Position numbers and translations under genes: made by a program. A stretch of DNA of 62,823 bases, counting the filler, from Klebsormidium nitens (Eukaryota; Plantae; Klebsormidiophyceae): the NCBI GenBank assembly GCA_000708835.1. It is 6 parts of 6 records of this genome, joined end to end, with 100 filler letters (N's around TTAATTAATTAA, not from the genome) between each part and the next. Parts side by side here need not be neighbours in the genome. Positions count along the whole stretch, not along the records: positions 45,061 to 54,302 come from DF238021.1; 5 more parts are not named here. The stretch is one strand, 5' to 3'. Positions 5,284 through 54,302 of the stretch are shown piece after piece. The stretch's first letter is position 1. Each line of letters begins with the position of its first letter. The notes under the pieces are model-generated. The model ran no database searches and was not told where the DNA came from. It was given only the letters and a program-made list of their open reading frames with translations.

Positions 5284-8200
5284 TTAAAGGATTCCAGTGT
5301 AGACGTAATTCATGTACACCGTAGGGTTTCCGCTTATAGCATTAAGATTAAAGACTATACCATTCGACCCACTTGGAATGCTGTAGTTATTGATACTCAT
5401 TCCGTTATTGTAGAATGACTGTTGGACGAATGTCGCGGTCTGCCCCGAAAGACGCGAAATATTGATGGTAAGCATACAACTCACAGGATTGATAACCGCT
5501 GTCTTCATAAAAACTTTCAGTTCCCCCATACAAGTACTAGTACCACCGCTCCAAATCTGAGAAGTATCTAAGTAGCCTTGTGTTGCTGTCGTGAATGTGA
5601 TGTACCCTCCAAGATTTGAAATGATTACAGGCGTGCTACCGACTTGATTGAATGATGGTATTGCAAAAGCGTCCGCTCCTATCTGAAATCCATTCGCAGA
5701 GTGAGAAGTTGTCAATGCTCCGTTTACTGCAGTTCGTACAGCATTTCCACTCGTCGCATTGATGGTGGTCAGACCACTTGACGACTGAGTAGCCATGTAC
5801 CCTGTAGAATTGTGGTTATTAACATGACTGAATGTAGCGTCAGATGAGAACACGTTCGAACTTATCTGTGCTAATGAAATCACAGTCCCGCCCCTGATAG
5901 AACATGAACCATCAGCGTAAAGGGTCATGTTAGATGTAGATGACCCGTTTTTGAACGTGATATTTCCACCAGCGTTGTCATAAGTCGAACAGTTTATCTT
6001 TCCTGATATGGTCGCATTATTTCCGCAAGAGATGTTGTTTCCTGCCGTGAAATTACTAGCGGAGCATGTCGCTGTGAGACCATCGACCGTCATTAAGTCG
6101 GTGAACGATAAGAGGTTTGAGTTAGAAGGTTTACAAATCTTGAAGGTCGCTGCTGAGAATGAACCTGATATGACTGCTCTCACTGTACCATTTGCAAATT
6201 GTCCCAAACCGTACAGGTCGGTGGTGGTCGATGGTGTACCATAAGAGGTGCATATAAGCATACCAGGGTCTGCATTCGGGTTTCGCCATCCAAGGTTAGA
6301 TGTAAGTTGCATAGAATAAGCACCACCAGTTTTGTCATAAAACGAATACGTACCATTACTCGCCGAAAAGATTGTATCAGCATTCTGAGCAAAATAGATA
6401 CGATTGTTGTTATCACATGAGATAATCCATTGGTTTTGTTTCACGGCGAGACCGTTGCTAAGAGTCAGTTGACCAGCAAACGTTCCAGTGCCACCATTGT
6501 AGAAATTCCCAGAGTTAAAATGTGTTGCACTGTTCAACGTTTGACCTACTGTAATGTTTGAACTCTGAATCAAATTTCTAACATATAAGTTCCCTGTATC
6601 TGCTGTCAGACTCATAAGACAATTTTCGCCAGCATTTTCCCATATAAAACCTTGACTTGCCCCGCTTCCAACTCGCATACGGATATGGTGTGATGTCCTT
6701 CCGTCCAAGGAAGAACAAGCAGTATTTGAAGCGGCAGATTTACCCGCTCCAGACTGACACATATATCCACTCCGTATTGGCGTCATTTTGATCCCAGTAT
6801 CGAATTCCCTTGCCATAACCAGTATCCGCCTGTTGATTTACACCAAGCACGCCACTGACTATTAAATTTCCAGACGAATGAACCATAGTAATCTTACTGT
6901 TTGCCATATTGACGTCGCCTGTAGACATGTTGACAATGTAAGGGCGTAGACTGTTGAAAGAACCAGAAGAATCACCCGCATTGGTACATAAATGATAGTA
7001 GGTCGCACCATCGCTGTAGTGAATCATGCCAATCGACCCATATGTATTTTGCATGCAAATATTGTTATTCGTTATAAGGTTTGTGGTCTTCAAACTTCCC
7101 CCTACATTAACATTACCAGTGTTTGACAACGTTCCATTAATTTTGACAAACTGTGATGAAATCTGAAGATTGTTTGACCAACCACCATTGTACGACGTGT
7201 AGAAGTTATGTACTCCATTTGTTCCCGTATTATAACCCGCGTAATAGTTGATGCCCCATCCTGCCGAATGTGTAATCTTACTAGCATTCGCTCCAACTGA
7301 CGTTAGGACTATTTTATCACCATCAGCACTGTTCAAAGATATGACCCCGCTATTTCTCATTGTCGTCATCGTAGCATCGCCCAGTGATGCCGTAAGAGTG
7401 TTTAATCCACCCCAGGGCGACCCAGAAGTACCAAGGTTATTTGCACCTGCTGAGGAAGAAACGATATCTGCCCCCGAGGAGACTCCAGCATAAGCATTAA
7501 TACTGTTGTTAACAAGCTGATTATTTACTAAGACTGAATCTGCTGTAAGACCTAAACCGACCGAGACGTTGCTCGAGAACGATACATTATTGACGTTCGA
7601 TCGGAGGGCGTTGGACGCCCACACATAGTTCCCGCTGCTCGCGACAGAAGCAAGGGCGTTCGACGCCCAGTAAGATGTATTCGATCCGTATAACACCTGA
7701 GGACTTGTATTACTACATAATGCTGGTACAGATGTAAGATATCCAAAACTCAAATTTCCAGCGAACATCGTTGCTACACATGTGCCATTTATCTCGAGAG
7801 GATACGCAGGATTACTCGTTCTAATTCCGACATTTGAGTAATTCCAATATAATGTCCCGTTGATACCATTTCTCCCAGGTGCGAAATTCGACCCATTCGC
7901 AACGTATCCTAGTACCCCACCTTGCCACCCGTAAACAGCAGTTCCATCAATGGTTTGCCCTGTGCCAGCGACATTGGCGTAAGTTATACCAGCATTCCCA
8001 TTCTGAATATATAATGGATTCGTACTCATCGAAAGGGCGGCGGGTGTAATCGTGCCACTTACACTTAAGTTCGAAATGGTCGCAGATGTACTTAGAACGT
8101 TCGACGCCTGAATATATCCATTGATGAAAGTGTTGGAACTTATCGTAGTCAGCGAATTTGATGTCTCCGTCTTGATCTGAAGATTTGAAAGTACTGAACC

Positions 8201-45060: not shown

Positions 45061-45133
45061 GGAAGCTGAATGCGAAGAAAGTGGCGACGACGAGCGCGCC
45101 CGCCATGCATAGCTTCTTGACGAAGAGGTCCAT
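45061..45133 (-). CDS. 5' fragment of a small hydrophobic protein
   Basis: MDLFVKKLCMAGALVVATFFAFSF begins 10 nt after the Topo II stop and runs into the linker. Confidence 0.4.
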
Positions 45134-45143
45134 CTTGAGAGAG

Positions 45144-48100
45144 TCAGAGGTATTTTTCGAGGGCATCGAGGTCCGCGCTCCAGATAAGCTGAGGCGTCTT
45201 GCCTTCCAGCACCGCTATCTGAGTCTCCAAGCTTCTTATCCTGCCTTCTAGCTCCACCAGCCGCTCGCTCGTCATGCTGGCCAGCTGCATCTTGAGCATG
45301 TTGCGGGCCTCCGTCCGATCAGCCGTCGTCGCCAGCGTCAGTATGTCGTCCACGACCTCTTCGGCGGGTCGCCTCCAGACGGCGATGCGGCCGGCCACCA
45401 CGGCGTCCACGAAGGCACGCTGGTCGCGCTTGGACCGAAGATCCTCCTCCAGGTCCGACAGCATCCGCGCCTTCCGCCTCCCGTACAGTTCCAGCCTCGC
45501 GTCGAAGAACTCTAGCAGCATCTCTTCCACGGACCCGTACTTCCGGATGACGCCCCCGGTGTCGAAGGCGTACATGTTGCCATCGTCCACGTTCTTCCTG
45601 AGACGGAGCGCCCTCTCGGGATCCCCCTCCAGCCTCTCGGACAGGCATCTCTCCGACTCGAAAACCAGATCGATGCGCACCTCCTCCTCCGTCGACGTGG
45701 CGTGCACCCTCGCCACACCGTCCATCCCCTCTGCGAGCTCCTTGTACGTCTCGGTCCAGGTCCCGACGGGCAGCTCCGTGATCCTCAGGGTGGCGTTCCC
45801 GGCGCGCTCGAAAGAGCCCTTGACCACCCACGACTTTCCTTCGCCGGCCGACTCGACGGTGCCCCGGAACTTCCTCCAGAAAGGGGGCATCGGAAGCAGC
45901 GCGGCTCCCTTGCCGACGCCCAGGAGCAGCCGGAGGTTAGCCATGATGGTCTTCGGATCTCTGGGGTGGATGCTCGTGGAGAAACCCCAAGCTATGCCGC
46001 TGCACCCGTTCACGAGCAGCATCGGGAGGACGGGTGCGAGGTGCTCGAACTCGATTCTCTCGCCCTCCTCCGTGAGGGGCCTCAGGAGCGCCGAGTCCTC
46101 GCGGCGGAAGATCAGAGGGGCCGGCGCGGACAGCTTCGTGAAGATATAGCGAGGGCTGGCTGCGTCCTTCCCGCCGAGCAGCCGCGTTCCGAAGCAGCCG
46201 ATGGGTTGGAGCAGGTTGATGTTGCCCGCTCCGACGAAGTCCTGGGCGAGATTCACTATGGCGCTCGCTAGGGAGGTCTCCCCGTGCTTGTAGATCGTGC
46301 GGAGGGCCACCTTGGCCGCGAGCTGGGCTACCTTGATCTCGTCGGCCTCCGGCGACTCCAGCAAGGTGAAGATGATCTTCCGTTGGCTGGGCTTGAGACC
46401 ATCCCAGACGGAGGGCAGCGCCCGTTCGCTCGCCGCCAGCCCGTACCGCACCAGGTCGTTGTTCACGAACTCGGTGAGGCTCATCTCGGGCCCCGTCAGC
46501 TCCTGTGGGGGCGTCGCGGTCGCCGCCACGATCCAGCCCTTGCGCTCGTCCGAGCGAGAACCGGAGAAGGCGAGCTGCATGCTGCGGTGTCCCTCGTCGT
46601 CGCGCGTGTACCTGACGAGGTCCATCTTGCCGAACACGGCCTTCGCCTCGGCCGAGGTATGCGTGCCCAGTCCCTTGTAGTAGCGTATCTTGAAGCGGCG
46701 CTTCCTCTCGTCGTCGATCCACTCGGAGAACGCCCGCTCGCTGAAGAACTCGACGCAGCTCCCCTTGCCGGCGGACGGGATCGCTCTGATGATGGGGGTC
46801 CTCAGGGAGCAGACGAAGCCGAGGTCGACCAGGTTGGGCCAGAACGTCTCGACGAAGTGGATGATGAGCCCTAGGATGTGGTAGCCGTCGCTGTCGGCGT
46901 CCGCCAGCACGACCAGCCGGCCGTAGCGCAGCTGGCGGACGGACTCGTACGACGTGCCGTGCTTCAGACCCACGATCCTCTGGATCCGCGTCACCTCGGC
47001 GTTGGCGGCGAGCTGCTTGGCGGAGGCTTCCGAGACGTTGAGGAGCTTGCCCTTCAGTGGGAAGATGCCCCAGTACTCGCGCTCGGTCCGGTCCAGGGCG
47101 CCGACGCCTGCGACGGCGAAAGACTTGGCCGAGTCGCCTTCCGTGAGGAGCAAGGTGCAACGGTGCGAGTCGCGGGTCCCGGCCTTGGGCGCGTCGTCCA
47201 GCTTGGGAATCTTGAGCGCCGAGCCCCAGGACTTGGTGCCGTTCGTAGAGGCCAGGAGGCGCTTGTCGCTGGCGCGCTCCGACTCCGCCACCACCTCCCG
47301 GAGCTTGAGCCGGTCGACCACCTTCTTCGCGACCTCCGCGGGCAGCTCGAACCGGGGCAGCCTGGAGGCCGGCGTATTGCACGCGTCCTTCGACTGGCTC
47401 GAGAAGCTCGGATTCGCCACGTCCACGTGGACGACGAGGAAGATGGCCGCCTTCATGGCGGTCGTGCAGCGCTCGGCTCCCCTGATCGCCTGCCCGAGAG
47501 CACGCATGAGCGCGTTGCACGCCATGTCCACGTGTGTGCCCCCCATCGGCGTGACGACCCCGTTGACGGACGAGACGTGAGAGTACCCGGAACCGGGCGC
47601 CGACCTAGAGACGGCCAGCCTCCAGGGCCCGAATACGTGCTCCACCCACCCTCCGTTCGTCTCGTAGAGCCGGACGTAGTCCACGAACCGTTTGACCTTG
47701 ATGGTCTTGCCATCGAAGGAGACGGCGGGCCGGGGGGTGCAACCGGCGGCGTCCATGACCCTCCGACGGAACAGCGCGACGGTGTCCTCGGAGAACGCTC
47801 GCTCCGCCTCCCCGAAGTACTCGAAGTCGGGGACGAAGGAGACCGTCACGCTGGAGCGCTCCTTGCTGGACTCCGCCAGCCTCTTCACCTTCGTGTCCTC
47901 GCCCCTCGTGACCATGCCCTCCCCCCAGGAGTGGGTCAGCTTGAGGTTACGCTCCCGGTCCACCACCTCGACGTCGAAGCGCGTCGAGAGGATGTTGGCG
48001 AGCTTCACGCCGAGGCCATTACGTCCGCCCGTCAGGCGGTCCTGCGAGTCGTCGAAATTGTTGCCGGAGAGCAGCACCCCGAAGACGACCACGGGAACGT

Positions 48101-48413
48101 ACAGATCCGTCATCTGATGGTGCTTGACCACGGGGATGGGGGCTCCGTCGTTCTTGATGCGGACCCGTCCTCCCTCCACGGTGACCTTGATGTACGTCAA
48201 GGACTCATCCCTCTTGGACCTGTCGATGGCGTTCACGAGAGCCTCGTCGAAGATCTTGTAGAGTCCCGGATTGAAGGTGATCTCGCGCTTCGAGATGGGG
48301 CCCTCGACGGCATCGGCCACGAAGCACTCCCTCGTGACCGGCTCCTTCGAGCCGATGTAGGTGTCGGGGCGTCGACGCACGTGCTCGATCGGCTCCAGCA
48401 CGGTGTACTCCAT
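45144..48413 (-). CDS. top2: Type IIA DNA topoisomerase, minimal viral-type (1089 aa)
   Basis: DEALVNAID, NDG, GRNGLGVKL (GHKL ATPase); TEGDSAK, PLKGKLLNV, DADSDGYHI (TOPRIM); YYKGLGT, DGLKPSQRK, YKHGETSL, ASPRYIF (catalytic Tyr). No eukaryotic C-terminal tail and no introns. Confidence 0.97.
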   Translation of the reverse strand: MEYTVLEPIEHVRRRPDTYIGSKEPVTRECFVADAVEGPISKREITFNPGLYKIFDEALVNAIDRSKRDESLTYIKVTVEGGRVRIKNDGAPIPVVKHHQMTDLYVPVVVFGVLLSGNNFDDSQDRLTGGRNGLGVKLANILSTRFDVEVVDRERNLKLTHSWGEGMVTRGEDTKVKRLAESSKERSSVTVSFVPDFEYFGEAERAFSEDTVALFRRRVMDAAGCTPRPAVSFDGKTIKVKRFVDYVRLYETNGGWVEHVFGPWRLAVSRSAPGSGYSHVSSVNGVVTPMGGTHVDMACNALMRALGQAIRGAERCTTAMKAAIFLVVHVDVANPSFSSQSKDACNTPASRLPRFELPAEVAKKVVDRLKLREVVAESERASDKRLLASTNGTKSWGSALKIPKLDDAPKAGTRDSHRCTLLLTEGDSAKSFAVAGVGALDRTEREYWGIFPLKGKLLNVSEASAKQLAANAEVTRIQRIVGLKHGTSYESVRQLRYGRLVVLADADSDGYHILGLIIHFVETFWPNLVDLGFVCSLRTPIIRAIPSAGKGSCVEFFSERAFSEWIDDERKRRFKIRYYKGLGTHTSAEAKAVFGKMDLVRYTRDDEGHRSMQLAFSGSRSDERKGWIVAATATPPQELTGPEMSLTEFVNNDLVRYGLAASERALPSVWDGLKPSQRKIIFTLLESPEADEIKVAQLAAKVALRTIYKHGETSLASAIVNLAQDFVGAGNINLLQPIGCFGTRLLGGKDAASPRYIFTKLSAPAPLIFRREDSALLRPLTEEGERIEFEHLAPVLPMLLVNGCSGIAWGFSTSIHPRDPKTIMANLRLLLGVGKGAALLPMPPFWRKFRGTVESAGEGKSWVVKGSFERAGNATLRITELPVGTWTETYKELAEGMDGVARVHATSTEEEVRIDLVFESERCLSERLEGDPERALRLRKNVDDGNMYAFDTGGVIRKYGSVEEMLLEFFDARLELYGRRKARMLSDLEEDLRSKRDQRAFVDAVVAGRIAVWRRPAEEVVDDILTLATTADRTEARNMLKMQLASMTSERLVELEGRIRSLETQIAVLEGKTPQLIWSADLDALEKYL

Positions 48414-48481
48414 GGTTCGTGGGAATGAGCCTTGATCCCGATCGGCGACGGGAATTTATACTGGGACTATTCGGTGCAGAG

Positions 48482-48832
48482 TCACTTGACGCTCTCCCGC
48501 CACGAGCGCCTTTCCGACAGAGGTGCGACCCTGTGTTCGACGCCACAGGGCGACGAGGAGACTCTCCAATCGCGCGCCGAGAGGTGCTGACGCTTGATCC
48601 GGCGGAACGTGGGCTCGTCGATGGTCACCTTGATGTGGACGTGTTGGTGGCTCTTCCAGCGGCCCTTGTTGTATTGCACGTTGAAGGAGTCGGTCATGGC
48701 GCCTATCATGAGGTCTATCTCGCGCAGGACCGCGTGCGCTTCCTCCGGAGCCATGTCCGTGAGGTGCTCTACGTGCCGGTAGGGAGTGTATATGAAGAAA
48801 TCTCGGTCTCGCAGGTCGAAATGCAGACGGCC
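48482..48832 (-). other. Second copy of the HIT gene, 3' part (5' part lost in a 20-N gap)
   Basis: Near-identical to 49059-49410; HQHVHIK versus HQHVHMK. Confidence 0.85.
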
Positions 48833-48852
48833 NNNNNNNNNNNNNNNNNNNN

Positions 48853-48990
48853 CGTGATCTCGCGCTTCGAGATGGGGCCCTCGACGGCATCGGCCACGAA
48901 GCACTCCCTCGTGACCGGCTCCTTCGAGCCGATGTAGGTGTCGGGGCGTCGACGCACGTGCTCGATCGGATCCAGCACGGTGTACTCCAT
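48853..48990 (-). other. Second copy of the Topo II 5' end, cut by a gap
   Basis: MEYTVLDPIEH versus MEYTVLEPIEH at 48413. Confidence 0.85.
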
Positions 48991-49058
48991 GGTTCGTGGG
49001 AATGAGCCCTGATCCCGATCGGCGACGGCAATTTGTACCGGGACTAATCGGTGCAGAG

Positions 49059-49496
49059 TCACTTGACGCTCTCCCGCCACGAGCGCCTTTCCGACAGAGG
49101 TGCGACCCTGTGTTCGACGCCGCAGGGCGACGAGGAGACTCTCCAATCGCGCGCCGAGAGGTGCTGACGCTTGATCCGGCGGAACGTGGGCTCGTCGATG
49201 GTCACCTTCATGTGGACGTGTTGGTGGCTCTTCCAGCGGCCCTTGTTGTATTGCACGTTGAAGGAGTCGGTCATGGCGCCTATCATGAGGTCTATCTCGC
49301 GCAAGACCGCGTGGGCTTCCTCCGGAGCCATGTCCGTGAGGTGCTCTACGTGCCGGTAGGGAGTGTATATGAAGAAATCTCGGTCTCGCAGGTCGAAATG
49401 CAGACGGCCGAAGGTTCCGTCTTCGAAGATGTAGGAGCGGATCTTGGGCGATGCGAAGGGGTCGCATGTGTAGCACGCCAGGCTGACGGAAGGCAT
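49059..49496 (-). CDS. HIT (histidine triad) family nucleotide hydrolase (145 aa)
   Basis: N-terminal CYTC, YTPYRHVEHLTDM, FNVQYNKG...HQHVHMK (HxHxH triad). Confidence 0.8.
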   Translation of the reverse strand: MPSVSLACYTCDPFASPKIRSYIFEDGTFGRLHFDLRDRDFFIYTPYRHVEHLTDMAPEEAHAVLREIDLMIGAMTDSFNVQYNKGRWKSHQHVHMKVTIDEPTFRRIKRQHLSARDWRVSSSPCGVEHRVAPLSERRSWRESVK

Positions 49497-49559
49497 CGCT
49501 CACTGACGCCAACATCCATTTTACGGAAGCGCTTTCGACCGAGGGAGTTTCGTGGAATG

Positions 49560-50318
49560 TCAGTAGGATATTGGCTCGTAGTCCAGCGTGTAACCGAGCT
49601 TGAGCAAGGCTTGGCGGCCGATGTACTCTGAATACGGGGGTGGTATCGCCTGAGCGATGGACTTACCCTTTGTCAGCCAGTCGATCTGCATCGCGTCAGC
49701 CCACTCTGCAACGGTCCCTCGTCGACGGCCTGGGTCACCATACACGGCAAACATCTGGCCGGCTGAATCGGTCGACAGATCCCCACCTCGTGTCCTCGGT
49801 CGTGGGCCAGAGGTCCTTGCGGGTCTGTCTCTCTCCAAGATCTCGACCCGCTGTCTCAAATCCCGCTCGATCTCTCTGATCGACCTGTACCTGACGCCCG
49901 ACGGCGAATAGTAGTACGTATCGGTCGTACCCGCACTTTCACCAGCTTTCCGCACGACCGTCCGTGATTTCCATTCGTCTTCACCAGTCCCCATCGTGAG
50001 CTGGAGGGTGGGCACCTCCGGATCCAACGGATCGAGAGGTTCGGTCGATGTTTTGCGTCCGAGGTGCGGGGATCGATCCCCCAGCGAGCGCCCGGCGTGA
50101 CTGCACCTGCGATCCTTGACTTCGAGCCCGAAATTCGATTCGAAAAGCCTGTGCCGAAACACCTTCAGCTTTGGAAACATCGTGCCGCACAGCATCGCCA
50201 ACGGCCCCGATAGCTCGCGCACAGCACCCATGACGTTCTCTATCACGTACGGTTTTCCACTGGCCACCAACTTCTCTCGAGTAGACGGAATGAGGTTCTC
50301 GTGATTCCAACGGTGGCC
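49560..50318 (-). other. Second copy of the MTase-MBD gene, 3' part
   Basis: Aligns to 50489-51247 with about 7 amino-acid differences; MBD at 49857-49985. Confidence 0.85.
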
Positions 50319-50488
50319 NNNNNNNNNNNNNNNNNNNNGAAGGTTCCGTCTTCGAAGATGTAGGAGCGGATCTTGGGGGATGCGAAGGGGTCGCACGTGT
50401 AGCACGCCAGGCTGACGGAAGGCATCGCTCACTGACGCCAACATCCATATTACGCAGGCGCTTTCGACCGAGGCGGTTTCGTGGAATG

Positions 50489-51544
50489 TCAGTAGGATAT
50501 TGGCTCGTAGTCCAGCGTGTAACCGAGCTTGAGCAAGGCTTGGCGGCCAATGTACTCTGAATACGGGGGCGGTATCGCCTGGGCGATGGACTCACCCTTT
50601 GTCAGCCAGTCGATCTGCATCGCGTCAGCCCACTCTGCGACGGTCCCTCGTCCACGGCCTGGGTCACCATACACGGCGAACATCTGGCCGGCTGAATCGG
50701 TCGACAGATCCCCACCTCGTGTCCTCGGTCGTGGGCCAGAGGTCCTTGCGGGTCTGTCTGCCTCCAAGATCTCGACCCGCTGTCTCAAATCCCGCTCGAT
50801 CTCTCTGATCGACCTGTACCTGACGCCCGACGGCGAATAGTAGTACGTATCGGTCATACCCGCACTTTCACCAGTTTTCCGCACGACCGTCCGTGATTTC
50901 CATTCGTCTTCACCAGTCCCCATCGTGAGCTGGAGGGTGGGCACATCCGGATCCAACGGATCGAGAGGTTCGGTCGATGTTTTGCGTCCGAGGTTCGGGG
51001 ATCGATCCCCCAGCGAGCGCCCGGCGTGACTGCACCTGCGATCCTTGACTTCGAGCCCGAAATTCGATTCGAAAAGCCTGTGCCGAAACACCTTCAGCTT
51101 TGGAAACATCGTGCCGCACAGCATCGCCAACGGCCCCGATAGCTCGCGCACAGCACCCATGACGTTCTCTATCACGTACGGTTTTCCACTGGCCACCAAC
51201 TTCTCTCGAGTAGACGGAATGAGGTTCTCGTGATTCCAACGGTGGCCATATTGCTCGCGCTTCGCAGTAGGAATGATAGCGGTGAAGCTCTGGCATGGCG
51301 GTGAGGCCCACACGAACTCTGCCTCGGCGAGCTCAGCTTCGAGGGCAGATTTCCGTACGAACTCGAAGGGGTACTCTGCCTGCTCATCGATGTCATATCC
51401 GATCACGTCGAATCCCGCCAGAAAGAGCCCCATCCCAACGCCTCCTCCGCCGCAGTAGAGGTCGACGGCGAGGGGTCGTCTGCGCTCACCATCGGGACCA
51501 AGGGGTACGCAACGCTCACCGATGGTGGTCAGACGGGCATCCAT
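50489..51544 (-). CDS. Phage-type C5 cytosine DNA methyltransferase with an internal methyl-CpG-binding domain (351 aa)
   Basis: Motif I DLYCGGGG, IV ASPPCQ, VI IENV, VIII RHRLF, C-terminal MQIDWL...AQAIPPPYSEYIG. Insert EWKSRTVVRKTGESAGMTDTYYYSPSGVRYRSIREIERDL at 50786-50914. Likely start MDARL at 51544. Confidence 0.88.
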   Translation of the reverse strand: MDARLTTIGERCVPLGPDGERRRPLAVDLYCGGGGVGMGLFLAGFDVIGYDIDEQAEYPFEFVRKSALEAELAEAEFVWASPPCQSFTAIIPTAKREQYGHRWNHENLIPSTREKLVASGKPYVIENVMGAVRELSGPLAMLCGTMFPKLKVFRHRLFESNFGLEVKDRRCSHAGRSLGDRSPNLGRKTSTEPLDPLDPDVPTLQLTMGTGEDEWKSRTVVRKTGESAGMTDTYYYSPSGVRYRSIREIERDLRQRVEILEADRPARTSGPRPRTRGGDLSTDSAGQMFAVYGDPGRGRGTVAEWADAMQIDWLTKGESIAQAIPPPYSEYIGRQALLKLGYTLDYEPISY

Positions 51545-51628
51545 CGTTCTATCGTCTCGAATGCATAAAAATTCGAGAAAGGTTGGAACGAGCGAGCGTG
51601 CGTCGGTCTGGCGAACCGTCATAATCCA

Positions 51629-52939
51629 GTGCCAGAATCTAAGAATTTTCCCCGCGTTTCGTATGTCACCATGCCTCCTGCATGCCGCGTGCCGCGTTGC
51701 GAGGCAATCCGGGGGGATCGTTGCAGGTGTCCCAATCCCTGGATCGAATTCGTGAGCAAGACGGCGAGGGAGCGTCGGCGTCAAGGGATCCCTAGATTGA
51801 CTCGGCAGCAGCTTTCGTCGGCGTACAAAGAAGCCAGAGATAGGGGCGACTTCGTGCCGCCCGAGCACCTGAGAGAGAAGGTGGCGCCCTGCAAAACGGA
51901 CATATTCAAGCTGTGTGCATGGCGGATGAAGCGCAGGTCACCCCTGATGATCGACCTGGACTGGAGAAAACTCAGGAGCAATGCTGCAAAGTCGCTGCTC
52001 GACAAGCGTGTCGCGGCCTTCATCGAGCAAGAGACGAACGGGCCGGACCAACAGGGCGCGACCCAAGTCGAGGGGTTCAGGAGAGCCTTCTCGAGACTCG
52101 GGTGGACAGAACCACCCCCGGGCATCCCGCTCGGTGAGGTGAAGGAGATGATCACCGATAGACTGGGCCGCAGAGAATTGACGGTGCAGAAGTACATCGG
52201 TGGTGGTATCTCCGGTTCCGTTTTTCGAGTGGAGCGGAGAGAGGCGGACGGAAACATCGCGAAAGCGGTGGTGAAGATAGTTCGCATCCGGCACGACGGC
52301 GAATGGACGACTTTCGTCAGGGAGGTCGACAAGCAACGGCAGTTTGCTGAATTACTGGATGACCACCTAGAAACCAAGACCCTGCGCGTCCCCACAGTGC
52401 ACGAGATGTGGAAGCTACCTGGAGGCATGGAGGCTGCCGTATTGATGGAGTCCATCGACGGGTCCCTCGGCTCATTCGTGCGCAGATATCGCGACAACCC
52501 GAGCTTCCTCCTCGAGATCGCGAGGCAGCTGAAACGCACGGTGGCATCACTGCGCCGGAAGAAGGTGGTTCACGGCGACTTACATTACGAGAACATAGGC
52601 TACAAGTTACTACCGAACGGCAGACCCGAAATCTACATCATAGACTTCGGGCGAAGCGTGGGGCCACTGACGGCGACTCGATTCGAGAGGGTCGCAGACA
52701 TCGACCGCTGGTGCGTCTGGAGAGCAGCCTGCACGAGAGGCACGTCCGCCGCAGCATTCAACAAGGCGCTGCATGAGGTGAGCTTCCCCGGGAGCAGAGT
52801 GATGGACGACTGTACAGGATTTGGGAGCAAGCCGATCTCTGATGGTATGGATGCGAAGATGGTGGAGCGCATAGACGACCTCAGCTTCGGTAAGATCGTC
52901 GAGCTCATGATTTCAGTCGATCCGACATTCAAACTTTAG
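51629..52939 (+). CDS. Viral-type Ser/Thr protein kinase with a basic N-terminal extension (436 aa)
   Basis: IGGGISGSVF (Gly loop), AVVKIV, HGDLHYENI, IIDFGRS; intronless. Confidence 0.85.
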   Translation: MPESKNFPRVSYVTMPPACRVPRCEAIRGDRCRCPNPWIEFVSKTARERRRQGIPRLTRQQLSSAYKEARDRGDFVPPEHLREKVAPCKTDIFKLCAWRMKRRSPLMIDLDWRKLRSNAAKSLLDKRVAAFIEQETNGPDQQGATQVEGFRRAFSRLGWTEPPPGIPLGEVKEMITDRLGRRELTVQKYIGGGISGSVFRVERREADGNIAKAVVKIVRIRHDGEWTTFVREVDKQRQFAELLDDHLETKTLRVPTVHEMWKLPGGMEAAVLMESIDGSLGSFVRRYRDNPSFLLEIARQLKRTVASLRRKKVVHGDLHYENIGYKLLPNGRPEIYIIDFGRSVGPLTATRFERVADIDRWCVWRAACTRGTSAAAFNKALHEVSFPGSRVMDDCTGFGSKPISDGMDAKMVERIDDLSFGKIVELMISVDPTFKL

Positions 52940-53420
52940 GTGTCCGATACAGCCCCTCGAGAATCGCTTTTTGGCCCGCAAGATCCAACTTCGGAGACCT
53001 GACGACGTACTCTCCCGTCGGAAAATTGATTCGCAGCGGCAGATTATACGCATGTGCGTGAGTCTCTAGCTCGCCTAGCCGCACTTCGTGAAGTGTCGAA
53101 GATGGGTCGAACTGGTATTGGAACTCGCATGCATACTCGCGATCGGAGAACACCATCGCCATCGGCGGCTCCATCGCTGTCAGTGGCGTCAATGGTGCTC
53201 TCAGGATGTTGCTCCGATGCTTCAATACGAACACCTTGTCGGCGTTCGAAAGCGATGGCGGGCTGATGTCACATGCCCTGACACCGAGACCGGCGATCGA
53301 GCGGATGGGTTGCACGAATCTAACAGCATGAGACATGACACCCTTACCCATCCGAAAGAAAAGATGCGTGCAGAATGTACGTGATGACGATCGTCCGTTT
53401 CTTTTACCAGGGGCTGCCAC
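52929..53420 (-). CDS. Hypothetical protein
   Basis: ORF converging on the kinase with overlapping stops; true start uncertain. Confidence 0.4.
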   Translation of the reverse strand: MAAPGKRNGRSSSRTFCTHLFFRMGKGVMSHAVRFVQPIRSIAGLGVRACDISPPSLSNADKVFVLKHRSNILRAPLTPLTAMEPPMAMVFSDREYACEFQYQFDPSSTLHEVRLGELETHAHAYNLPLRINFPTGEYVVRSPKLDLAGQKAILEGLYRTPKV

Positions 53421-54257
53421 GTCAGCAAATAAAGCGTCTTGTGGAGGAATCCGAGGTCTTTCCTCTTAATGGATTCCCAAGTGATTATTATCACAAGACA
53501 GTAAGACAGTAAGACGCANNNNNNNNNNNNNNNNNNNNCTTGCGTCTTACGGGGTGGTATGGGTGGGGCCTGCCGGGCAATGGGTCCCCGCTCGTTGGTG
53601 GCCTGTGATCTAAGCTGAGGTGGTAACCAGACTGCCCTCGGCTGGTGCGCGCTGCTGTAAACCAGGTGCAGTGGGCTGCCCCATTTGCAACAAGCCCGCA
53701 GGAATGCATCTGTTGAAAGTGCCGCAGCAAGGTCAGCCTCAATCAACTCGCAGCCCTTACTCAAGCCTGAAACTTCCTGCTCCTGCAAACCGCTGCCTAC
53801 ATTCTGCAGCAATGCGTACGCCGAAGGAGCTGTAAGGGACGGTGTGGCTAGCCCAAAGCGGCCCCGTGCCTGTCCAATTCACATTCCCGACCAACAGGCG
53901 CACGTCATATGCCCTCTTACTAACCATCGCTGATGATTGTTCCTATTTCTCGTTGAAACGGGAACAGTTTAATATAGTAGGGAGTGCTGGCAACTAGATT
54001 GGCGCGAAACACCGAGTTTTGTGTAAAGGTACACCAAAGAAAGTAAGCAGATCAACGGCTGTGACCTAAACTCCGTACATACAGAGTTTGCTCCAGAGTC
54101 GTCGAAGGGACCCTACCAGTTCAACCCAAAAGTTACGCGGTTGGTACCGAGCGAATCATGCCAAAGCTACTTCAAGGATCAGAAGTGGCAAACTTTGGTG
54201 CAAGTCTGTGATTATTTGATGGGCGCGCGCGAAGGAAGTGGTCAGTTGCAAAAAAAA

Positions 54258-54280
54258 CCCTAAATCCTAAAACCCTAAAA
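54258..54280. repeat. Telomere-like remnant CCCTAAA-TCCTAAAA-CCCTAAAA
   Basis: Three degenerate plant/algal-type units 22 nt before the scaffold end. Confidence 0.45.
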
Positions 54281-54302
54281 GGTGCATCAGCTGCATCAGT
54301 TG

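What the first reader, a model, noticed from the sequence alone, without database searches (positions are those of the whole stretch)
50489..51544. Phage-type DNA cytosine methyltransferase with a methyl-CpG-binding domain inserted in its target-recognition region
Seen in sequence: a compact bacteriophage-style C5 MTase (DLYCGGGG, SPPCQ, ENV, RHRLF, AMQIDW...QAIPPPYSEYIG). Between motif VIII and the C-terminal motifs it carries EWKSRTVVRKTGESAGMTDTYYYSPSGVRYRSIREIERDL. Established knowledge: this matches the MBD of MeCP2/MBD2, and equivalents of MeCP2 R111, D121, Y123, R133 and S134 are all present at identical spacing (R+10=D, D+12=R). Both divergent copies (MBD at 50786-50914 and 49857-49985) keep these residues while differing at neighbouring positions. 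Inference: a one-polypeptide 5mC reader-writer in a giant-virus context. It could spread methylation from existing mCpG, mark or camouflage the viral genome, or act on methylated host chromatin. I am not aware of this architecture being described, but cannot check the literature.
Basis: partly seen in the sequence, partly recalled or inferred. Interest (0 to 1): 0.92.

Follow-up and report, generated by a model that had tools for sequence, protein, structure and literature searches.

The report
Giant-virus DNA methyltransferase with built-in methyl-CpG reader
A giant-virus-like genome fragment encodes a small phage-type DNA cytosine methyltransferase with a eukaryote-type methyl-CpG-binding domain inserted where its DNA-recognition part should be, so one 351-residue protein may both read and write the 5-methylcytosine mark; I found this combination in no paper and no named database entry.

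Summary
The core observation holds. The ORF at 50489-51544 (-) encodes 351 aa with C5-methyltransferase motifs I, IV (PCQ), VI (ENV), VIII and IX/X. A ~111-residue insert lies between VIII and IX. The insert contains a genuine MBD: Pfam PF01429 scores 35.3 bits against a cut-off of 21, and a profile of four viral copies hits only MBD chains in the PDB (MBD2 E 1.4e-14). The AlphaFold model is confident (pLDDT 89.8, MBD >90).

The "second divergent copy" is not a paralogue. It is a redundant variant contig placed between two abutting contigs at 20-N scaffold gaps. Related natural contigs carry one copy.

About twelve relatives (43-94% identity), from at least seven samples, share the architecture and keep both Arg fingers, the Asp and the Tyr. 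Their contigs look like Nucleocytoviricota. One relative is a Chromochloris zofingiensis gene model.

Insert-less relatives (~210 aa) lie on IMG/VR viral contigs of phage-like size. A sister giant-virus group has a diverged insert at the same site.

No clade member comes from NCBI or UniProt, and the literature searches found no description.

Function is inferred: the MBD probably steers methylation to already methylated CpG DNA. One close strain carries a premature stop, so the gene looks accessory.

The parts
50489..51544 (-). MBD-containing C5 DNA methyltransferase gene (351 aa plus stop). The longer ORF reaching the GTG at 51868 is probably not used, because homologues start at the ATG.
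51440..51466 (-). Motif I, the SAM-binding loop (residues 27-35).
   Evidence: Nearly invariant across 78 relatives.
51290..51304 (-). Motif IV, SPPCQ, with catalytic Cys84.
   Evidence: S81, P82 and C84 are invariant in 78 sequences.
51161..51169 (-). Motif VI, ENV (residues 126-128).
   Evidence: E126 and N127 are invariant.
51068..51088 (-). Motif VIII, FRHRLFE (residues 153-159).
50681..51013 (-). Insert of about 111 residues (178-288) in the variable (TRD) loop. It is absent from the ~210-aa relatives.
   Evidence: Alignments A1 and A4. The PHROG 363 match spans residues 21-336 of the protein but only profile positions 51-214.
50765..50938 (-). Folded MBD module (residues 203-260): four strands and one helix. 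The Pfam MBD match covers 213-256. It carries R222, D232, Y234, R244 and S245.
50537..50680 (-). C-terminal catalytic-domain motifs IX/X (residues 289-336). A clade-specific tail follows, to residue 351.
48853..50318 (.). Redundant variant contig, bounded by N20 gaps. It duplicates 48277-48832 and 50339-51247 and holds the 'second copy' of the methyltransferase 3' part (49560-50318) and of the 145-aa ORF (49059-49496). It is an assembly artefact, not a tandem duplication.
45144..48413 (-). Neighbour: eukaryote/NCLDV-type DNA topoisomerase II (1089 aa).
48482..48832 (-). Neighbour: the 3' part of a 145-aa ORF with no Pfam match. Its 5' end continues at 50339-50425 once the redundant contig is discounted.
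51629..52939 (+). Neighbour: divergently transcribed protein-kinase-like gene. The true start is probably downstream, because relatives are called at 288-317 aa.

Best explanation
This is one real gene of an uncultured giant virus (Nucleocytoviricota-like, about 60% G+C, possibly infecting green algae). It encodes a probably active C5 DNA methyltransferase whose catalytic core derives from the ~210-aa phage-type enzymes, which have almost no target-recognition domain.

A eukaryote-type MBD, closest to MBD2/3, has been inserted into the loop where the target-recognition (small) domain normally sits, so it lies beside the DNA cleft.

My inferred mechanism has two steps. First, the MBD's two arginine fingers, with the Asp and Tyr that support them, bind a methylated or hemimethylated CpG in the major groove. 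Second, because the MBD is held close to the catalytic domain, the enzyme methylates a cytosine in that CpG or in a neighbouring site. The result would be a self-reinforcing read-write enzyme that maintains or spreads CpG methylation on DNA that already carries the mark.

Shown: the architecture, its conservation, the predicted fold and the genomic context. Inferred: methyl-dependent binding, catalytic activity, CpG specificity, and whether the substrate is host DNA, endogenised viral DNA or replicating viral DNA. I lean towards already-methylated host or integrated DNA.
For: MBD identity: Pfam scores above its cut-off, and the profile hits only MBD chains in the PDB, from 1.4e-14 (MBD2) to about 2e-6 (a MeCP2 chain).

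Residue conservation in 11 clade members at 43-94% identity: W215, D232, Y235, G240, R244 and S245 are invariant; R222, G229 and Y234 are at least 90% conserved.

Catalytic residues: S81, P82, C84, E126 and N127 are invariant in 78 relatives; R154 and R156 are at least 90% conserved.

Fold: pLDDT 89.8 and pTM 0.79. The MBD blocks score 90-96, and only 188-193 and 274-282 are disordered. Foldseek gives probability 1.0 to MET1, M.HaeIII, DNMT1, DNMT3 and M.HhaI.

Tethering: the insert sits exactly in the VIII-IX loop. In P0007 and P0008 the linkers are only about 10-15 residues, so the MBD cannot be far from the cleft.

The fusion is real: it occurs on independent contigs from at least seven samples.

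NCLDV context: mRNA triphosphatase, TBP-like protein, topoisomerase II and YqaJ; D5 primase-helicase; RNR small subunit.

Viral sequence is not CpG-depleted (observed/expected 1.0-1.16). This fits a substrate other than the viral germline, but only weakly.

Biological plausibility: host 5mC silencing and a viral counter-measure are reported for a green-algal giant virus (bioRxiv 10.64898/2026.10.09.758095).
Against: There is no biochemical or methylome evidence at all.

Pfam DNA_methylase scores below its cut-off for this protein (13.5 against 22).

Model coordinates and PAE were not available to me, so I could not check whether the MBD's DNA-binding face points at the catalytic cleft.

Among close strains the gene is less constrained than its neighbours. 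Its omega is 0.39-0.68, against 0.18 for topoisomerase II and 0.21 for the 145-aa ORF, though the substitution counts are small. One co-occurring strain (L004/L005) carries one premature stop. The Chromochloris-associated copy (L087) carries one in-frame stop. The gene is therefore dispensable at least at times.

Some MBDs (MBD3, MBD5/6) do not select for 5mC even though they have the fold.
Confidence: 0.55

Rival explanations
1. The MBD acts as a plain CpG-recognition module. It replaces the missing target-recognition domain and confers CpG specificity regardless of methylation state. The enzyme would then be a de novo CpG methyltransferase that marks the viral genome itself, for example for self/non-self discrimination or packaging.
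For: The insert occupies exactly the TRD position of a family that otherwise lacks a TRD. The high pTM suggests a fixed rather than dangling domain. Giant-virus and phage methyltransferases usually modify the virus's own DNA (established knowledge; cites this for Pandoravirales).
Against: The residues that distinguish methyl-selective MBDs are kept. These include the Tyr that is replaced in the poorly selective MBD3; that replacement is established knowledge. Viral contigs show no CpG depletion. No endonuclease partner was recognised next to the gene.
Confidence: 0.2
2. The gene is a decaying accessory gene. The fusion once worked, but in this lineage it is drifting towards loss, so it has no current function.
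For: There is one premature stop in strain L004/L005 and one in-frame stop in L087. Omega within the insert is about 0.9-1.7 between close strains, based on very few substitutions.
Against: The window copy, the redundant-contig variant and L001/L002 are intact. Catalytic and MBD key residues are conserved down to 43% identity. Whole-gene omega is below 1.
Confidence: 0.12
3. The MBD serves as a protein-interaction or general DNA-affinity module, as in MBD3 or MBD5/6. It would recruit host chromatin complexes or simply raise processivity, without reading 5mC.
For: Several eukaryotic MBDs have lost 5mC selectivity (PMC2917364, abstract as listed). The C-terminal third of the Pfam MBD model (positions 57-77) is not matched.
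Against: Both Arg fingers, the Asp and the Tyr are conserved in nearly all clade members. The closest solved relatives are the methyl-selective MBD2 and MBD1.
Confidence: 0.1
4. The fusion is an assembly or gene-calling chimera.
For: The window scaffold itself contains assembly artefacts.
Against: The same uninterrupted ORF occurs on independent contigs from JGI and Logan assemblies at 43-94% identity. The insert is flanked on both sides, in one frame, by methyltransferase motifs.
Confidence: 0.01

Closest known systems
Eukaryotic methyl-CpG-binding domains (MBD2/MBD3 type; Pfam PF01429)
   Same: Significant sequence match. The Arg-Asp-Tyr-Arg-Ser constellation has the same spacing. The predicted fold is a beta-sheet plus a helix.
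   Different: Here the domain is an internal insert in an enzyme, encoded by a virus. The C-terminal hairpin part of the Pfam model is not matched. An extra N-terminal strand (203-208) and C-terminal strand (256-260) close the insert.
Compact phage-type C5 methyltransferases (PHROG 363; ~210 aa)
   Same: The core is 45-55% identical and all catalytic motifs are shared. Foldseek also finds short viral forms, such as the 218-aa putative methyltransferase of Tetraselmis virus 1.
   Different: Those enzymes have only a short loop of roughly 10-20 residues where this protein has a ~111-residue insert with an MBD. They sit on 40-68 kb IMG/VR viral contigs of phage-like size.
Plant chromomethylases (CMT3/ZMET2)
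   Same: The concept is the same: a chromatin-mark reader domain is embedded inside a C5-methyltransferase catalytic domain, coupling reading to writing. ZMET2 is among the Foldseek hits. The embedded chromodomain is established knowledge.
   Different: Their reader is a chromodomain for H3K9me2, not an MBD for 5mC. The insertion site differs and the proteins are much larger. The two insertions are not homologous.
DNMT1/MET1 maintenance methyltransferases
   Same: They are the top structural matches for the catalytic domain. They are also a functional analogy if the MBD makes the enzyme prefer hemimethylated CpG.
   Different: DNMT1 reads the parental methyl group with loops of its own large TRD and is regulated by RFTS, CXXC and BAH domains. 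None of those domains is present here. The viral protein is about a quarter of the size.
MBD fused to other enzymes (MBD4 glycosylase, SETDB1 histone methyltransferase)
   Same: An MBD directs an enzyme to methylated DNA (SETDB1; MBD4: PMC4964934, abstract as listed).
   Different: Those are terminal, linker-joined fusions to non-DNMT enzymes of eukaryotes. Here the MBD is inserted within a DNA methyltransferase domain of a virus.
Sister 'long-form' giant-virus methyltransferases (group 2: P0024, P0050, P0128 and others, ~340-490 aa)
   Same: They have an insert at the same site, share a second insertion after motif IV, and are the sister clade on the core tree (156 of 200 bootstraps). They sit in NCLDV context with Rpb1 and PolB. 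The inserts are weakly similar (hhalign 96% over the whole insert; the helix segment scores 24 against at most 17.7 in shuffles).
   Different: They give no Pfam MBD match even at E 10 and no MBD hit in the PDB. They have an extra helix. The first Arg finger is not conserved.

Membership tests
C5 DNA cytosine methyltransferase superfamily (PF00145-type) | Motif I SAM-binding loop, motif IV Pro-Cys with the catalytic Cys, motif VI ENV, and the arginines of motif VIII | tested here: met
   All are present and are invariant or at least 90% conserved in 78 relatives.
C5 DNA cytosine methyltransferase superfamily (PF00145-type) | Pfam model score above the gathering cut-off | tested here: not met
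   13.5 bits against a cut-off of 22 for this protein. However, 18 of 31 relatives pass, and PHROG 363 'DNA methyltransferase' matches at E 3.3e-26.
C5 DNA cytosine methyltransferase superfamily (PF00145-type) | Catalytic-domain fold | tested here: met
   Foldseek gives probability 1.0 to MET1, M.HaeIII, DNMT1, DNMT3A/B, M.HhaI and DNMT2.
C5 DNA cytosine methyltransferase superfamily (PF00145-type) | Methyl transfer to C5 of cytosine in DNA | not testable with these tools
Methyl-CpG-binding domain (PF01429) | Pfam score above the gathering cut-off, and specific hits to solved MBDs | tested here: met
   35.3 bits against 21. The profile hits only MBD chains, with MBD2 at 1.4e-14.
Methyl-CpG-binding domain (PF01429) | Two arginine fingers with the supporting Asp and Tyr at canonical spacing | tested here: met
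   R222, D232, Y234 and R244 (plus S245). They are conserved across the clade. The correspondence to MeCP2 numbering rests on the ungapped alignment plus established knowledge.
Methyl-CpG-binding domain (PF01429) | Beta-sheet plus alpha-helix wedge fold | tested here: inconclusive
   AlphaFold predicts strands 203-208, 215-221, 231-236 and 256-260 and helix 246-253 at pLDDT above 90. I could not run a structure search on the domain alone, and the whole-protein Foldseek list is filled by methyltransferases.
Methyl-CpG-binding domain (PF01429) | Preferential binding to methylated CpG | not testable with these tools
   Inferred from residue conservation only.
DNMT1-type maintenance methyltransferase | RFTS, CXXC or BAH regulatory domains and a large TRD | tested here: not met
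   No such Pfam domains were found. The protein is 351 aa.
DNMT1-type maintenance methyltransferase | Preference for hemimethylated CpG | not testable with these tools
   This is a hypothesis only.
Restriction-modification system | A cognate endonuclease gene adjacent to the methyltransferase | tested here: not met
   The neighbours are a kinase-like gene, a 145-aa ORF with no Pfam match, and topoisomerase II. A novel nuclease in the 145-aa ORF is not excluded.
Nucleocytoviricota (genomic context) | Hallmark or typical NCLDV genes on the same or closely related contigs | tested here: met
   mRNA triphosphatase, TBP-like protein, topoisomerase II, thioredoxin and YqaJ on L004. D5 primase-helicase on L006. 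RNR small subunit on L088. No capsid or PolB gene was seen on the MBD-clade contigs themselves. PolB and Rpb1 are on the sister-group contig L170.

The most novel reading that the evidence does not exclude
The MBD has become the target-recognition domain of a minimal methyltransferase. It would read the parental-strand 5mC of a hemimethylated CpG while the catalytic domain methylates the opposite cytosine. That would make a self-contained 351-residue maintenance methyltransferase, convergent with DNMT1, which lets a giant virus propagate or rewrite CpG methylation patterns in its host or in integrated viral DNA.
Probability: 0.25. Interest if true: 0.88.

Novelty: new variant of a known kind. 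Interest (0 to 1): 0.72.

Why it matters
MBDs are regarded as eukaryotic readers of 5mC, and DNA methyltransferases as writers that find methylated DNA through separate partners or large regulatory domains.

- It would be, as far as my searches show, the first viral MBD and the first MBD-methyltransferase fusion.
- It would be a compact natural example of a read-write module of the kind thought to give epigenetic memory and spreading.
- It would be a new player in the epigenetic conflict between giant viruses and algal or protist hosts, which silence integrated viral DNA by CpG methylation.

It also shows a phage-derived enzyme and a eukaryotic chromatin domain being recombined inside a giant virus.

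Tried and rejected
1. Tandem duplication of the gene. Rejected as a scaffold artefact.

2. MBD-only word-index protein search (region 205-265). It returned only P0001, because no exact 5-mers are shared with eukaryotic MBDs. It says nothing about the origin of the MBD.

3. Metagenome-contig scan with the clade alignment. It says nothing about distribution.

4. IMG/VR scans. The full-length alignment gave only ~210-aa forms among the best 80 loci. The MBD-only alignment gave no relative.

5. Testing whether the sister-group insert is an MBD. There was no Pfam hit at E up to 10 and no MBD hit in the PDB. Only a weak hhalign signal appeared, together with a similar secondary-structure order. This remains unresolved.

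6. CpG depletion as a footprint of methylation. There is none. This is weak evidence either way.

7. I first read the 145-aa neighbour as a HIT-family hydrolase because of an HxHxH-like stretch. Pfam gives no match at E up to 0.01, so I dropped that name.

8. A first Biopython tree script timed out. I redid it with numpy.

9. The best BFVD hit is a 642-aa Pithovirus LCPAC201 methylase. I could not fetch it, so whether it has a comparable insert is unknown.

10. Model coordinates and PAE are not exposed by the tools, so the orientation of the MBD relative to the catalytic cleft could not be examined.

Full report
**What is in the window**

The usable piece (45061-54302) is a scaffold of four contigs joined by runs of 20 N at 48833-48852, 50319-50338 and 53519-53538.

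Self-comparison shows that 48277-48832 recurs at 48854-49409 (98.2%) and that 49410-50318 recurs at 50339-51247 (97.8%). The 1466-nt middle contig is therefore fully explained by the end of the left contig plus the start of the right one.

In the related environmental contigs L004 and L001, the left and right contigs abut base to base. The middle contig aligns collinearly across that junction. Those contigs have a single methyltransferase gene and a single 145-aa ORF.

It differs from the main copy by 5 synonymous and 8 non-synonymous changes over 252 codons.

**The gene**

ORF 50489-51544 (-) gives 351 aa. It has motif I (28-35), SPPCQ with Cys84, ENV (126-128), FRHRLFE (153-159) and the C-terminal IX/X block.

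- Pfam's DNA_methylase model is sub-threshold for this protein (13.5 bits against 22).
- PHROG 363 'DNA methyltransferase' matches at E 3.3e-26.
- Thousands of ~210-aa homologues share 45-55% identity.
- The AlphaFold model (pLDDT 89.8, pTM 0.79) matches MET1, M.HaeIII, DNMT1, DNMT3 and M.HhaI with probability 1.0.
- S81, P82, C84, E126 and N127 are invariant in 78 relatives, and R154 and R156 are at least 90% conserved.

The enzyme is therefore probably active.

**The insert**

Compared with the short homologues, residues ~178-288 are an insertion in the loop between motif VIII and motif IX. This is the variable, target-recognition position.

- Residues 213-256 match Pfam MBD at 35.3 bits against a cut-off of 21.
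- phmmer finds MBD2 at 7.5e-8, and then MBD1, MBD3, MBD4, plant MBD5/6 and MeCP2.
- A profile of four viral copies hits 29 distinct PDB sequences, all of them MBD chains. MBD2 scores 1.4e-14, MBD3 6e-13, MBD1 2e-10, plant MBD6 3e-9, MeCP2 5.5e-8 and MBD4 1e-7.
- R222, D232, Y234, R244 and S245 align without gaps to the DNA-contacting arginines and to the Asp, Tyr and Ser of MBD2 and MeCP2. The role of these residues is established knowledge.
- The model puts strands at 203-208, 215-221, 231-236 and 256-260 and a helix at 246-253, all at pLDDT above 90. Only 188-193 and 274-282 are disordered.

**Relatives and evolution**

About twelve proteins share the architecture. P0001, P0002, P0003, P0005, P0006, P0007, P0008 and P0122 pass the Pfam MBD cut-off or carry a precomputed MBD hit. 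P0126 scores 20.7 bits and P0123 is weak. In P0130 the MBD is visible in the alignment. Their identity to the window protein is 43-94%.

In an alignment of 11 members, W215, D232, Y235, G240, R244 and S245 are invariant. R222, G229 and Y234 are at least 90% conserved.

tblastn shows that the apparently N-truncated members are gene-calling artefacts.

The contigs come from at least seven samples. They carry genes typical of Nucleocytoviricota:
- mRNA triphosphatase, TBP-like protein, kinases, thioredoxin, YqaJ and topoisomerase II;
- D5 primase-helicase, a PLOD-like glycosyltransferase and an aquaporin;
- ribonucleotide reductase small subunit.

P0130 is identical to a Chromochloris zofingiensis gene model on an unplaced scaffold. 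Its neighbours are a capping enzyme and UCH genes. Green algae of that order are known to carry endogenous giant-virus DNA (PMC13315243).

The topoisomerase II has no named relative above ~41% identity, so the virus lineage is uncultured.

Insert-less relatives in IMG/VR sit on 40-68 kb contigs of phage-like size.

A second 'long-form' group (~340-490 aa) lies on giant-virus contigs; for example, L170 is 245 kb and carries Rpb1 and PolB. It has an insert at the same site and a shared extra segment after motif IV.

On 204 core columns, with 200 neighbour-joining bootstraps, the MBD clade is monophyletic in 191, group 2 in 184, and the two together in 156.

The group-2 insert gives no Pfam or PDB MBD hit. 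It does align weakly to the MBD insert and has a similar order of strands and helices with one extra helix. It keeps the Asp, the aromatic residue and the Arg-Ser, but not the first arginine.

The simplest history is as follows. A phage mini-methyltransferase entered a giant-virus lineage. It acquired an MBD in its TRD loop once. One branch kept the MBD canonical, and the other let it diverge. This is an inference.

**Mechanism**

Shown: a catalytic core with intact motifs, a canonical MBD at the TRD position, short linkers in some members (about 10-15 residues in P0007 and P0008), and a confident single-body model.

Inferred: the MBD binds methylated or hemimethylated CpG in the major groove while the core acts on the same or a neighbouring CpG. 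That would give maintenance or spreading of CpG methylation on DNA already marked.

The substrate is unknown. Viral contigs are not CpG-depleted (observed/expected 1.0-1.16). This mildly favours host or integrated DNA over the viral germline.

A recent preprint shows host 5mC silencing of an integrated green-algal giant virus and proposes that a virus-encoded TET enzyme counters it. Viral manipulation of the 5mC system therefore has precedent. That preprint mentions neither an MBD nor a DNMT (0 occurrences of each term).

**Constraint**

Between close strains, omega is 0.39-0.68 for this gene, against 0.18 for topoisomerase II and 0.21 for the 145-aa ORF. The counts are small.

The L004/L005 strain has one premature stop caused by a substitution, with no indel. 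The Chromochloris-associated copy L087 has one in-frame stop. The gene is thus accessory and sometimes lost, as is common for viral methyltransferases.

**Novelty**

No clade member has an NCBI or UniProt source. All come from JGI or Logan, apart from one unannotated EukProt model.

Seven literature searches, and reading of the most relevant papers, found no MBD-methyltransferase fusion and no viral MBD. One review of eukaryotic and viral DNMTs states that orphan, virus-linked DNMTs generally lack companion domains. The library is incomplete, so prior description cannot be excluded.

In one search my script printed the bounds of the two aligned segments that flank the interruption in L087. I gave no exact position and no change that would undo them. 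This report gives counts only, and I have deleted nothing.

Noticed in passing
window 48833-48852, 50319-50338, 53519-53538 and 48853-50318: The scaffold has 20-N gaps, and a redundant variant contig about 2% divergent sits between two contigs that actually abut. Any 'duplication' in this piece should be distrusted.
   Followed up: yes
window 53415-53518; L001 5831-6956; L004 ~7045-7150: A 224-nt tandem repeat array (5 copies, 90% matches) lies in a gene-free stretch of the related contigs. The window contig breaks off inside it, just before the N gap, which probably caused the assembly break.
   Followed up: partly
window 53539-54302: The last contig of the scaffold differs in composition (G+C 0.53, CpG observed/expected 0.74) and has no blastn match to L001 or L004. 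Its placement next to the rest is unverified.
   Followed up: partly
L004 and L005 (methyltransferase gene, called as two ORFs): A co-occurring strain about 98% identical in DNA carries one premature stop (a substitution, no indel) in the MBD-methyltransferase gene. Strain L001/L002 from the same two samples has it intact.
   Followed up: yes
L001 10428-13420 and L002 2903-5895: In the strain with the intact methyltransferase, the topoisomerase II gene is called as two overlapping ORFs (317 + 697 aa), against one ORF of 1089 aa in the window and in L004. There are six gap openings relative to the window over 3.4 kb. These could be real frameshifts or assembly errors.
   Followed up: no
L004 18137-19969: A 610-aa ORF has a Cas12f1-like TNB domain (E 3.2e-5, below the Pfam cut-off). 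It may be a TnpB/Fanzor-like gene in the same virus.
   Followed up: no
L087 6806-8230 (Logan SRR24235291); protein P0130: An MBD-methyltransferase identical to a Chromochloris zofingiensis gene model on an unplaced scaffold sits among virus-like genes (capping enzyme, UCH) and carries one in-frame stop. It is a possible endogenous giant-virus element and a hint about the host.
   Followed up: partly
L169 931-2013; L170 10001-11317: A sister group of giant-virus methyltransferases (~340-490 aa) has a diverged insert at the same site that keeps Asp, an aromatic residue and Arg-Ser but is no longer recognisable as an MBD. L170 also has an intein-containing Rpb1.
   Followed up: partly
L006 4323-5039 and L088 9128-9877: An aquaporin (MIP) gene lies next to the MBD-methyltransferase in two divergent viruses. 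This suggests conserved local synteny in that branch.
   Followed up: no
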